DNA of 64,000 nucleotides, taken from positions 15,996,001 through 16,060,000 of the forward strand of contig OZ059894.1 in the NCBI GenBank assembly GCA_964057225.1, written 5' to 3'. The notes beneath the pieces were generated by a model. That model ran no database searches and was not told the origin of the DNA. It saw only the letters and a list, made by a program, of their open reading frames with translations. The position numbers and the translations under genes are program-made. Source of the stretch: Auanema rhodensis. Its lineage: Eukaryota; Animalia; Nematoda. Every line of letters begins with the position of its first letter. Position 1 is the first letter of the stretch. This document shows, one piece after another, positions 19,150-22,100 of the stretch.

Positions 19150-22100
19150 ATGGCTAGCTGGGACGAATATCTCACAAGCCAATTGAATAATGATGGCGTA
19201 CAGTTCACCTGGAATATGTGGCCTCATAGTAGAGTAGATGCACAGCGCCTAGTTGTTCCTCTTACATGTTTTTTTACACCGTTAAAGGTTTGATATTAAT
19301 TTAATAATTGTTAGGAGTATAGTGGTAATATATTATAGGAAAAGCCAACTGATCAGCTTCAGCAACCTCCATTGGAGTATGACCCTGTATTATGCCAAAA
19401 ATCTAGTTGCAAAGCTATTCTTAACCCCCTATGGTACTTTTAAAATGTAATATTTACTATATATGCTACAAATAATGTTTTAGCTTTGTTGATTATCGTG
19501 CCAAAACCTGGTTATGTGCAATTTGCAATCAAAGAAATCCTTTCCCTGCTCACTATGCTGCAATTGCTGAGGATAACAGACCACCTGAGCTTTATACTCA
19601 ATTTACCACGATTGAGTATACCTTAAAGGTTAGTAGTTTAGTAGCTAAAACATACAATTGATTCCCATTTCAGAAAGCAACAACTATGCCCCCAATTTTT
19701 ATCTTTGTTGTTGATTTGTGTGTAACTCACGAAGAACTAGATGCATTGAAGGAGAGCCTTCAGGTTTATCAGGAAATGAAGTTTAGATATTAACAAAAAA
19801 TTTAGTCTGCTCTTTCTCTCCTTCCCGCTGATGCTTTAGTGGGATTGATCTCTTTTGGTCGTATGGTACAACTTCATGAGCTCAATGTTCAAGGAATTAG
19901 CAGAAGCTTCGTGTTCAAGGTTTGTTAAAATAATCCAAAGTCTATGGCAACATTTATTAGTCGTAAATTTTGACAACGGTTTAAATAAGTTTATTTTCCC
20001 ATCACAATGTTTCCTCCAATTCTTGATCGCCGTTTTTGTAAAACTCCTTGCTGAAATTAAAACAAAAAATACAATTATAATTGAGAAAGTTAATTTTACC
20101 TGTGAATCTCCTATGTCTGTTATTAATTTTTCTCTTACTTCGCGTTGGAAGTCGTGATGTAACCGAACGAGACTGTTAACTAAGCTCTCAAGTTCGGCTA
20201 ATCTTTCTAACGAAGATGTATATGATGATGTTTTTCCAGCCAATGAAATGTTGCATATAAGGGAAAGAAAAAGCAGAGCAGCGTAAATTTGCTTATAGCA
20301 CATCGTGTCCCAATTGAGTTGAAGTTCCTAAAGATTTAAGGTCATCATTTGAAACATGAGTTTTAGCAAATAAAGCGCAGTTAACAAATGGAATAAAATA
20401 GTTCAAAAAATAAAAATTTGATGTCATTAAGTGATGTCATTTCAGGGTTCTAAGGAAGTCACTCAAAAACAACTTAAGGATATTTTAGCCATGAATATAG
20501 GTGCTCGTGCTCCAGCCCCAGGAGCTCCAGGTGCTCCGGGCGTAGCTCCAATGGGTTTGTTTATTATTCGAGTTTGTAATTGCATTTTAATTTTTAGCTG
20601 CTCCAGGACAACCACATATGGGAGTTCCAGGTGCTAGAGGCCCTGGTCCATATCCAGGACCTGGCCAATATCCTGGTCCTGCCGGTGCTGCTGCTCCTCA
20701 GCCATCTCCAGGAGCCATGCATGCTCCAACTAATAAATTCCTTCAGGTAATTTTTGAGGATTAAAAAACGAGATGAACGAAGTAAAAATGAAAAGTGAGG
20801 TGTAAAACACAAGAGAACTAGGTGTGGGTGGATTAGAGAGCTGTGAAACATTCAATGAACCAAGTACGAATCAAGGGAGGGGGAGCATTTCATTTCGAAA
20901 GACGTATGTGGCATTCCTGAGCTGCTTACATCGTAATTCGCTCCTCCCACTAGATCTAACTGACTCTCGAATAACTTGAACAAACTTCAACTAAACAAAC
21001 GCTAATGATGAACCCACATTTCAGCCAATTAGCGAATGTGAGGACTCAATTAATGAAATTTTGGAATCGCTTACCGTAGATAGATGGCCTGTTCCTCAAG
21101 GACATCGTCCAATGAGAGCAACAGGAGCTGCTTTAGCTGTCGCTGTTACTCTGTTAGAGGTATTAAATATAAAGAAAATTCAATGTGAAGTTTACGAAAA
21201 TTTAGTCTTGCTTCCCCAATACTGGAGCCAGAATTATGACTTTTGTTGGTGGAGCTTGTACTCACGGACCTGGGGCTGTTGTAGGAGAAGAGTTGAAAAC
21301 ACCTATTAGATCCTGGCATTCTATTAAGGAAGATGATGCTAGCTTCATGAAGAAGGTAAAAAAAGCTTTACCGAGGAGAAAAACAAAATAATTTGAATTT
21401 GAAGGCTACTAAGTTCTACGACTCATTGGCTTCTAGAGCCGTGAAGAATGGACACGCTATTGATATTTATTCATGTGCCTTAGATCAAACTGGTCTTTTA
21501 GAAATGAAAAATTGCTACAACTCTACTGGGGGTATTTAAAATTCATAATTTAGATTCAAATACTGATTTTTAGGTCATGTTGTTATGGGTGATTCGTTTA
21601 ATTCATCATTGTTCAAGCAAACATATCAAAGAGCTTTTGAGAAAAGCGCCAACGGTCAGTTGAAAATGGGCTTCAATGCTACTATGGAGGTGAGCAGGCT
21701 GAGAAGGCTTTAAGTTTCATTTTTTTAATTTAGGTCAAGACTGGTCCCGGTCTTAAGGTTGAAGGAGTTCTTGGATGTTGCGCTTCAGGTTTGCAATTTA
21801 CCATGTTCACTTGATTTAATATTTTTCATCTGTAGGCAATGTTAAAAATTCTTGTGTATCCGATACTGAAATGGGAATTGGTGGAACTTGTCAATGGAAA
21901 TTCTGTAGTTTAACACCACGCACTACTATTGCTGTTCTTTTCGAAATTAGTGCTCAGGTTCTGCAAAAATTTTATGAAAGTTTATTAAATTTTTTTTCCA
22001 GCATGGTGCTGCCATTCAACAAGGAGCTCGAGGAGTAGTTCAATTTGTAACTCAATATCAGCATGCTGATGGTAGAAAGAGAATTCGTGTAACAACAACT

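What the first reader, a model, noticed from the sequence alone, without database searches (positions are those of the whole stretch)
19991..20303. Hidden amidated-neuropeptide precursor gene nested antisense in a sec-23 intron
Seen in sequence: sec-23 introns here are mostly about 45-55 nt, but intron 5 (19920-20445) is 526 nt. Its minus strand carries an ATG, a hydrophobic leader ([22 protein letters not shown]), a helical spacer, a canonical 49-nt phase-0 intron (GTAAAA...TTTCAG) and a second exon [19 protein letters not shown]-stop. The whole gene fits inside the host intron. A candidate trans-splice AG lies at 20329-20328 (24 nt before the ATG), and an AATAAA overlaps the stop codon. The ORF track reads through the intron and misses the peptide. 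Established: signal peptide, dibasic site and terminal Gly-Lys is the substrate pattern for EGL-3/PC2, EGL-21/CPE and the PAM amidation enzymes. Inference: the mature product is [12 protein letters not shown]2, [11 protein letters not shown]2, or IGGNIVM-NH2 if RRSR is cut by a furin-type enzyme. It is not an RFamide and I cannot place it in a named nlp family from memory, so it may be an unannotated ligand for an orphan GPCR.
Basis: partly seen in the sequence, partly recalled or inferred. Interest (0 to 1): 0.88.

Follow-up and report, generated by a model that had tools for sequence, protein, structure and literature searches.

The report
nlp-69 neuropeptide gene inside sec-23
The small backwards gene inside the sec-23 intron is real and expressed, but it is this worm's copy of the already named neuropeptide gene nlp-69, which sits in the same intron in C. 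elegans and already has a reported receptor, so it fills a gap in the annotation and is not a discovery.

Summary
On the minus strand there is an ATG at 20303, a 68-codon exon, a 49-nt GT..AG intron (20099-20051) and a 19-codon exon ending [15 protein letters not shown]-stop.

Transcriptome contigs from four runs of one study carry exactly this spliced form.

The gene is not an unplaced ligand. It is the orthologue of C. elegans nlp-69, whose precursor ends [15 protein letters not shown] published alignment shows KR-xx-RIGG(N/T/M)I(V/M)MG across nematode clades. In C. elegans the peptide [12 protein letters not shown]2 was reported in 2026 to activate the GPCR NPR-44.

The nested antisense position is ancestral. 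nlp-69 lies in the same sec-23 intron in C. elegans, C. nigoni, a third Caenorhabditis-like assembly and Auanema sp. JU1783. The JU1783 protein is 87 aa and 65% identical to this one. Against JU1783, the last 16 codons show 7 synonymous and 0 nonsynonymous differences.

The product is not on record for this genome, and the literature notes that nlp-69 is often left unannotated.

Verdict: a real gene, a new member of a known family, of low interest.

The parts
19918..20443 (+). Host intron of the sec-23 gene (526 nt). It lies between the exon ending ...GISRSFVFK and the exon starting [14 protein letters not shown].
   Evidence: Spliced sec-23 contigs in 4 runs skip 526 nt with GT..AG. The flanking exons were translated. 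The same intron position holds nlp-69 in C. elegans, C. nigoni, a Logan assembly and Auanema sp. JU1783.
20328..20329 (-). Trans-splice acceptor AG; the mature mRNA starts at 20327.
   Evidence: The X1 contig carries 8 unaligned letters beyond 20329 that read CAAGTTTG on the minus strand. With the AG this gives the SL1 3' end. An AG acceptor 24-25 nt before the ATG is also present in JU1783. The X4 contig runs on to 20360, which fits an unprocessed form.
20304..20327 (-). 5' UTR of 24 nt.
   Evidence: Contig coverage. The block AACTC(A/T)ATTGGGA is conserved in JU1783.
20100..20303 (-). Exon 1 coding part, 68 codons: signal peptide plus propeptide.
   Evidence: Translation and RNA contigs. Overall 65% identity to the JU1783 protein P0001, E 2.7e-24.
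20238..20303 (-). Predicted signal peptide, residues 1-22 ([22 protein letters not shown], with cleavage after S-L-A).
   Evidence: The best 11-residue Kyte-Doolittle mean is 2.59 at residues 6-16, against at most 0.95 in the rest of the protein. Residues at -3 and -1 are small. JU1783 and C. elegans NLP-69 have the same layout. SignalP was not available.
20051..20099 (-). 49-nt phase-0 intron of the nested gene.
   Evidence: A joint that skips 49 nt is present in all 4 runs. JU1783 has a 44-nt intron at the matching place. C. elegans nlp-69 also has one phase-0 intron shortly before the peptide.
19991..20050 (-). Exon 2 coding part: [19 protein letters not shown]-stop.
   Evidence: Translation and RNA contigs.
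19994..20035 (-). Processing cassette: KR (20035-20030), peptide [10 protein letters not shown] (20029-20000), amide-donor Gly (19999-19997) and Lys (19996-19994).
   Evidence: The motif scan found a single copy in the window. [10 protein letters not shown] is identical to C. elegans NLP-69. Against JU1783 the last 16 codons show 0 nonsynonymous and 7 synonymous differences.
19928..19990 (-). 3' UTR, as far as the contigs reach. It ends about 11 nt from the host exon's 5' splice site.
   Evidence: Contig ends lie at 19928 (X1, X2), 19943 (X3) and 19963 (X4). Contigs cannot show a true RNA end.
19953..19958 (-). Likely poly(A) signal AATAAA, 32 nt after the stop.
   Evidence: Sequence. JU1783 has an AATAAA at the same distance, L001 6340-6345. 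The contigs pass the upstream AATAAA at 19995-19990. That this signal is the one used is an inference.

Best explanation
This is the orthologue of the nematode neuropeptide gene nlp-69, in a rhabditid worm close to Auanema sp. JU1783.

Shown here:
- It is a two-exon gene transcribed from the minus strand inside a sec-23 intron.
- Its mRNA is cis-spliced.
- At least some of its mRNA is SL1 trans-spliced 24 nt before the ATG.

Inferred from the established neuropeptide pathway of C. elegans and from the family alignment:
- The 87-aa prepropeptide enters the secretory pathway and loses a signal peptide of about 22 residues.
- A PC2-type convertase (EGL-3) cuts after Lys74-Arg75.
- A carboxypeptidase E-type enzyme (EGL-21) removes the terminal Lys.
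- The amidating enzymes use Gly86 to give [12 protein letters not shown]2, the homologue of C. elegans [12 protein letters not shown]2.
- A few neurons probably release it, and it probably acts on an NPR-44-type GPCR.
For: 1. Gene model. All four runs hold a contig with the 49-nt intron removed (GT..AG on the minus strand), separate from the spliced sec-23 contigs. One contig holds the SL1 3' end at the AG of 20329-20328.

2. Family. A paper search for IGGNIVM found NLP-69-1 = [10 protein letters not shown]. The supplement of McKay et al. 2022 (PMC8764417) aligns NLP-69 from C. elegans, Ascaris, Necator, Haemonchus, Bursaphelenchus and Globodera as KR-xx-RIGG(N/T/M)I(V/M)MG(K/R) at the precursor's C-terminus. 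The window has [14 protein letters not shown] at its C-terminus.

3. Orthologous position. nlp-69 lies antisense in the sec-23 intron after ...S(F/Y)VFK and before G(S/T)KEVT in four other loci: C. elegans chromosome V (L002), C. nigoni (L003), a Logan assembly (L004) and Auanema sp. JU1783 (L001). The exon positions were mapped.

4. Selection. Against JU1783, pN is 0.23 and pS is 0.80 over 86 codons. The last 16 codons have 0 nonsynonymous and 7 synonymous differences.

5. Leader. A hydrophobic core sits at residues 6-16 and S-L-A precedes the predicted cut.

6. Function of the family.
- NLP-69-1 activates NPR-44 with an EC50 of 232 nM in CHO cells (PMC7619462). That paper lists amidated peptides with the Gly removed.
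- An nlp-69 reporter allele is expressed in lateral IL2 neurons (PMC9478639).
- nlp-69 is expressed in AVK under HLH-15 control (PMC12803089).
- An amidated peptide from a Haemonchus nlp-69-type precursor was seen by mass spectrometry (PMC8153747).
Against: - Outside the last 12 or so residues, the Auanema-type and Caenorhabditis precursors are barely alignable (32% in a gapped alignment). Orthology therefore rests on the peptide, the gene structure and the shared host intron, not on full-length similarity.
- No peptide data exist for this species. The signal peptide was judged by rule of thumb only.
- The RNA evidence is from one study, kept as contigs whose library type is only guessed. Depth is low (4-22, against 175-259 for sec-23).
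- The SL1 tail is 8 letters in one contig.
- The extra basic residues (KRRSR) leave the N-terminus of the mature peptide open.
- Whether this genome has an NPR-44 orthologue was not tested.
Confidence: 0.93

Rival explanations
1. It is the same gene, but the main mature product is shorter. Cleavage after KRR, or after the RRSR furin/KPC-1-type site, would give [11 protein letters not shown]2 or IGGNIVM-NH2 instead of the 10-mer.
For: The window and JU1783 both have KRRSR before IGGNIVMG, which offers RR and R-x-x-R sites that other species lack. The two residues after KR vary among species: LH, YN, IT, IP, YG, FN.
Against: The Arg directly before IGG is invariant in all published NLP-69 sequences, which suggests it belongs to the active peptide. 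In every other species the only dibasic site is the KR two residues upstream. The C. elegans peptide that activates NPR-44 is the 10-mer.
Confidence: 0.2
2. It is a chance ORF on a non-coding antisense transcript, or on intron-derived RNA of sec-23, with no peptide product.
For: The ORF is short. Nothing matched in Pfam. The product is not on record in the protein collection. Expression is low.
Against: The intron is removed on the minus strand and an SL1 end is attached. Against JU1783 there are 7 synonymous and 0 nonsynonymous changes over the peptide cassette, and pN is far below pS overall. The C-terminal 10 residues are identical to a named C. elegans neuropeptide precursor in the same host intron.
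Confidence: 0.02
3. It is a lineage-specific peptide gene that converged on the RIGGNIVM motif, and not a true orthologue of nlp-69.
For: The propeptide shows little similarity to Caenorhabditis NLP-69. In the first search of the word-indexed collection the only hit was the Auanema protein.
Against: The gene has the same host gene, the same host intron, the same antisense orientation, the same two-exon phase-0 structure and the same terminal position of the peptide in two genera. Convergence on all of these is very unlikely. The Necator propeptide in the published alignment (LRLNHEIEREIYRRL) resembles the one here ([16 protein letters not shown]).
Confidence: 0.03

Closest known systems
C. elegans nlp-69 (NP_507878.1, CAC42356.1, UniProt Q95ZJ6; 110 aa; chromosome V)
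   Same: - The C-terminal [10 protein letters not shown]-stop is identical, with KR two residues upstream.
- It has an N-terminal hydrophobic leader.
- It has two coding exons with a phase-0 intron shortly before the peptide.
- It lies antisense in the same sec-23 intron.
   Different: - The precursor is 110 aa, against 87 aa here.
- The propeptide is hardly alignable.
- The peptide starts LH, against RS here.
- The host intron is about 4.3 kb in C. elegans, against 526 nt here.
Auanema sp. JU1783 'unnamed protein product' (P0001; GCA_943334845.2, contig CALQYR020007214.1)
   Same: - It is 87 aa and 65% identical (E 2.7e-24).
- The last 16 residues are identical.
- The gene structure, the host intron, the AG acceptor before the ATG and the downstream AATAAA are all the same.
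   Different: - It is a different species: the DNA of the region is about 78% identical, and synonymous sites are saturated.
- It is annotated there but not named.
- Its intron is 44 nt, against 49 nt here.
NLP-69 of parasitic nematodes (McKay et al. 2022, PMC8764417), e.g. Ascaris YNRIGGMIVM-NH2 and Necator ...[16 protein letters not shown]
   Same: They share the KR-xx-RIGGxI(V/M)MG motif at the end of the precursor. The gene is marked 'unannotated' in most genomes surveyed.
   Different: The residues at peptide positions 1, 2 and 7 differ. The genomic position in those species was not examined here.
Haemonchus contortus 'nlp-69c' peptide FYRTGGTILL-NH2 (PMC8153747)
   Same: It is a C-terminal amidated decapeptide with an xxR(I/T)GGxI core, detected by mass spectrometry with Gly loss plus amide. 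This shows that this type of precursor is processed as predicted.
   Different: It is a divergent paralogue-like sequence (TGGTILL, against IGGNIVM here) from another species.

Membership tests
nlp-69 neuropeptide precursor family | A single peptide at the very C-terminus with the motif KR-xx-RIGG(N/T/M)I(V/M)M-G, followed by a basic residue or the stop. | tested here: met
   The window encodes ...[15 protein letters not shown]-stop. The motif comes from the published alignment. The ten C-terminal residues are identical to C. elegans NLP-69.
nlp-69 neuropeptide precursor family | An N-terminal signal peptide. | tested here: inconclusive
   By rule of thumb only. The hydrophobic core at residues 6-16 has a Kyte-Doolittle mean of 2.59. 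Lys4 precedes it and S-L-A lies at -3 to -1. The C. elegans and JU1783 proteins have the same layout. No SignalP run was possible.
nlp-69 neuropeptide precursor family | Orthologous genomic position: antisense within the sec-23 intron that follows ...S(F/Y)VFK. | tested here: met
   C. elegans L002, C. nigoni L003, Logan assembly L004 and JU1783 L001 all carry the peptide exon between the same two sec-23 exons.
nlp-69 neuropeptide precursor family | Full-length sequence homology to a named NLP-69. | tested here: inconclusive
   Similarity to the unnamed JU1783 protein is significant (E 2.7e-24). Similarity to C. elegans NLP-69 is limited to the C-terminus (32% in a gapped alignment). The profile hits to Caenorhabditis proteins are circular, because the profile contained the C. 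elegans sequence.
nlp-69 neuropeptide precursor family | Expressed as a spliced mRNA. | tested here: met
   The spliced contig is present in 4 runs of one study, with an SL1 end in one.
nlp-69 neuropeptide precursor family | The mature amidated peptide is present in the animal. | not testable with these tools
   This needs peptidomics. The expected [M+H]+ values are 1101.631, 945.530 and 702.397.
nlp-69 neuropeptide precursor family | The peptide activates an NPR-44-type GPCR. | not testable with these tools
   This was shown only for the C. elegans pair (EC50 232 nM; PMC7619462). The rest of this genome could not be searched for the receptor.

The most novel reading that the evidence does not exclude
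nlp-69 has stayed in the same sec-23 intron, in antisense, in at least two rhabditid genera. In this species it is squeezed into 526 nt, with about 114 nt upstream and a 3' end about 11 nt from the host's splice donor. This persistence could reflect functional coupling between a COPII secretion gene and a neuropeptide gene, through shared enhancers or transcriptional interference, and not mere inertia.
Probability: 0.08. Interest if true: 0.4.

Novelty: new member of a known kind. Interest (0 to 1): 0.13.

Why it matters
This matters mainly for annotation. The gene is missing from the protein collection for this genome. nlp-69 is known to be skipped or mis-modelled: several deposited models read through the intron and lose the peptide. 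Adding it completes this species' neuropeptide catalogue and gives one more sequence for the NLP-69/NPR-44 ligand-receptor pair.

The conserved nesting in one sec-23 intron is a tidy marker of orthology and a small example of a long-lived nested gene pair. It does not open a new biological question.

Tried and rejected
- Pfam scan of exon 1 found no family. This is expected for a neuropeptide precursor.
- A word-indexed protein search with exon 1 alone found no candidates. The full 87-aa product was needed.
- I tried to list weaker candidates by raising max_evalue above 10.
- I then looked up the C. elegans sequence printed in a paper's supplement by exact match.
- An exhaustive profile search of 1.84 billion representatives gave only 4 hits. 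These were the known relatives plus an 833-aa protein that matches the helical propeptide part in five stretches. I take that last hit as coiled-coil noise.
- A paper search for the C. elegans cosmid-style name together with nlp-69 found nothing.
- The bacterial promoter and terminator scan is irrelevant to a nematode gene and showed nothing above its shuffles.
- The idea of an unplaced peptide for an orphan GPCR was rejected once the peptide string matched NLP-69-1.
- Exact look-up of the window's own product found no record. So I cannot name the species. I can only say its closest annotated relative is Auanema sp. JU1783.

Full report
**What is in the sequence.**

- The ATG is at 20303.
- A 68-codon exon follows, starting [22 protein letters not shown] and ending DSQ.
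- The intron is 49 nt, GTAAAA...TTTCAG, at 20099-20051.
- A 19-codon exon reads [19 protein letters not shown] then stop, at 20050-19991.

The mechanical ORF list reads through the intron as a 155-aa ORF and so misses the peptide. The plus strand carries a sec-23 gene whose exons flank this stretch.

**RNA evidence.** Four public runs from one study hold the stretch. Their library type is only guessed as RNA. However, their sec-23 contigs have all introns removed with GT..AG ends, so they behave as transcriptome assemblies.

In all four runs a separate contig of about 350 nt covers 19928, 19943 or 19963 up to 20050, joined to 20100-20329. It skips exactly 49 nt. The skipped ends read CT..AC on the plus strand, which is GT..AG on the minus strand. 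Depth is 4-22, against 175-259 for sec-23.

In run X1 the contig goes 8 letters beyond 20329. On the minus strand they read CAAGTTTG, which with the genomic AG gives CAAGTTTGAG. From my own knowledge of C. elegans SL1 (GGTTTAATTACCCAAGTTTGAG), this is the end of the spliced leader.

The X4 contig runs on to 20360, as an unprocessed precursor would.

All contigs pass the AATAAA that overlaps the stop (19995-19990). A second AATAAA at 19958-19953 fits the contig ends better. The tool warns that contigs cannot show true RNA ends, so the poly(A) site is an inference.

**What the gene is.** A full-text search for pieces of the peptide found one paper. It lists the C. elegans peptide NLP-69-1 as [10 protein letters not shown].

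The supplement of McKay et al. 2022 (PMC8764417) prints C. elegans NLP-69 (110 aa, ending [16 protein letters not shown]). It also aligns NLP-69 from Ascaris, Necator, Haemonchus, Bursaphelenchus and Globodera. All end in KR, two variable residues, RIGG(N/T/M)I(V/M)MG and then basic residues or the stop.

The window's product ends [15 protein letters not shown], so it fits this motif exactly. Its last ten residues are identical to the C. elegans protein. The same supplement marks nlp-69 as 'unannotated' in Ascaris, Necator, Bursaphelenchus, Globodera, C. brenneri, C. remanei and C. japonica. Its absence from gene sets is therefore the rule, not a peculiarity of this genome.

**Relatives and position.** The 87-aa product finds one protein in the 5.8-billion collection. 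This is an 87-aa 'unnamed protein product' of Auanema sp. JU1783, 65% identical, E 2.7e-24. Its gene lies antisense inside the sec-23 gene of that species (L001), with a 44-nt intron at the matching place.

The C. elegans protein, looked up by exact sequence, is NP_507878.1 / Q95ZJ6, 'Neuropeptide-Like Protein'. Its gene on chromosome V lies antisense inside sec-23 as well (L002).

Mapping the window's SEC-23 exons onto the loci shows that it is the same intron everywhere. The intron follows ...GISRS(F/Y)VFK and precedes G(S/T)KEVT(Q/A)KQ(L/I)KD. This holds in JU1783 and C. elegans, and in C. nigoni (L003) and a Logan assembly of a Caenorhabditis-like worm (L004). The host intron is about 4.3 kb in C. 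elegans and 526 nt here.

Neighbouring genes agree with this. In JU1783 a Na/Ca exchanger lies on one side, and a 334-aa gene and then a slo-1-type channel lie on the other.

**Selection.** I made a codon alignment with JU1783, placing two single-residue gaps by hand after the ungapped comparison proved out of register. It gives 57 identical residues of 86, pN 0.23 and pS 0.80. Synonymous sites are saturated while the protein is kept.

In the last 16 codons ([16 protein letters not shown]) there are 7 synonymous and no nonsynonymous differences. The helical part of the propeptide (SLERL...EKL) is also well kept, with 24 of 30 residues identical.

The DNA alignment of the whole host intron shows two further conserved features. 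One is an AG acceptor 24-25 nt before the ATG. The other is the AATAAA about 32 nt after the stop.

**How it most likely works.**

Shown here:
- The gene is transcribed, cis-spliced and SL1 trans-spliced.
- It is under purifying selection as a protein.

Inferred from the established C. elegans pathway, from my own knowledge (EGL-3/PC2, EGL-21/CPE, the amidating enzymes), and from the family alignment:
- The signal peptide is cleaved near Ala22.
- The propeptide is cut after Lys74-Arg75.
- The terminal Lys is removed.
- Gly86 is converted to a C-terminal amide, giving [12 protein letters not shown]2.

The leader was judged by hydropathy and the -3/-1 rule only.

The Arg before IGG is invariant in all published sequences. 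For that reason I prefer the 10-mer over the shorter forms that the extra basic residues (KRRSR) would allow.

What the family is known to do:
- NLP-69-1 activates the previously orphan GPCR NPR-44 with an EC50 of 232 nM (PMC7619462). That paper lists amidated peptides with the Gly removed.
- An nlp-69 reporter allele marks the lateral IL2 neurons (PMC9478639).
- nlp-69 is expressed in the AVK hub neuron under HLH-15 control (PMC12803089).
- An amidated decapeptide from a Haemonchus nlp-69-type precursor was detected by mass spectrometry (PMC8153747).

**Limits.**
- The RNA comes from one study, kept as contigs.
- The SL1 tail is 8 letters in one contig.
- No SignalP run, peptide data or receptor search in this genome was possible.
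- Outside the C-terminus, the Auanema-type and Caenorhabditis precursors barely align. The profile hits to Caenorhabditis proteins are circular.
- The window's own product is not on record, so the species cannot be named. Its closest annotated relative is Auanema sp. JU1783.

**Verdict.** The interpretation as an amidated neuropeptide precursor is right. The suggestion of an unplaced ligand for an orphan receptor is not.

This is nlp-69, a named and functionally studied gene that sits in the same sec-23 intron in C. elegans. It is a new, apparently unannotated member of a known family. Interest is low.

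Noticed in passing
L002 8001-8270 (C. elegans isoform, P0004); P0007 (C. 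remanei); L004 8001-8222 (P0008): Several deposited nlp-69 products read through the intron, end ...QRVSFDDY or similar, and lack the RIGGNIVMG peptide. In L004 the peptide exon is intact at 8405-8443 but was not called. These are either minor intron-retaining isoforms or model errors. They help explain why the family looks so small in protein databases (only 4 hits in 1.84 billion representatives).
   Followed up: partly
window 20330-20443: Only about 114 nt separate the nested gene's trans-splice site from the next sec-23 exon, and one contig (X4) already covers 20330-20360. The promoter of the nested gene must be very compact, or must overlap host exons or introns.
   Followed up: no
window 20480-20741 (+): The SEC-23 exons after the host intron encode a long Pro/Gly/Ala-rich low-complexity stretch ([11 protein letters not shown]...[15 protein letters not shown]...). 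JU1783 shares it. It did not align to the C. elegans locus in the tblastn.
   Followed up: no
window 17300-18270 (+): ORFs rich in Gly-X-Y repeats ([16 protein letters not shown]...; [19 protein letters not shown]...) suggest a cuticle collagen gene just upstream of sec-23. A 334-aa gene without Pfam hits sits at the matching place in JU1783 (L001 7661-9025).
   Followed up: no
window 20742-21019 (+): This is a second unusually long sec-23 intron (278 nt). No RNA contig lies inside it in the four runs, and it has only short ORFs. Nothing suggests a second nested gene.
   Followed up: partly
window 18388-18740: This is a low-complexity stretch between the collagen-like gene and sec-23, with runs encoding poly-Val, poly-Asn or poly-Thr depending on the frame. 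It is probably simple-sequence intergenic DNA.
   Followed up: no
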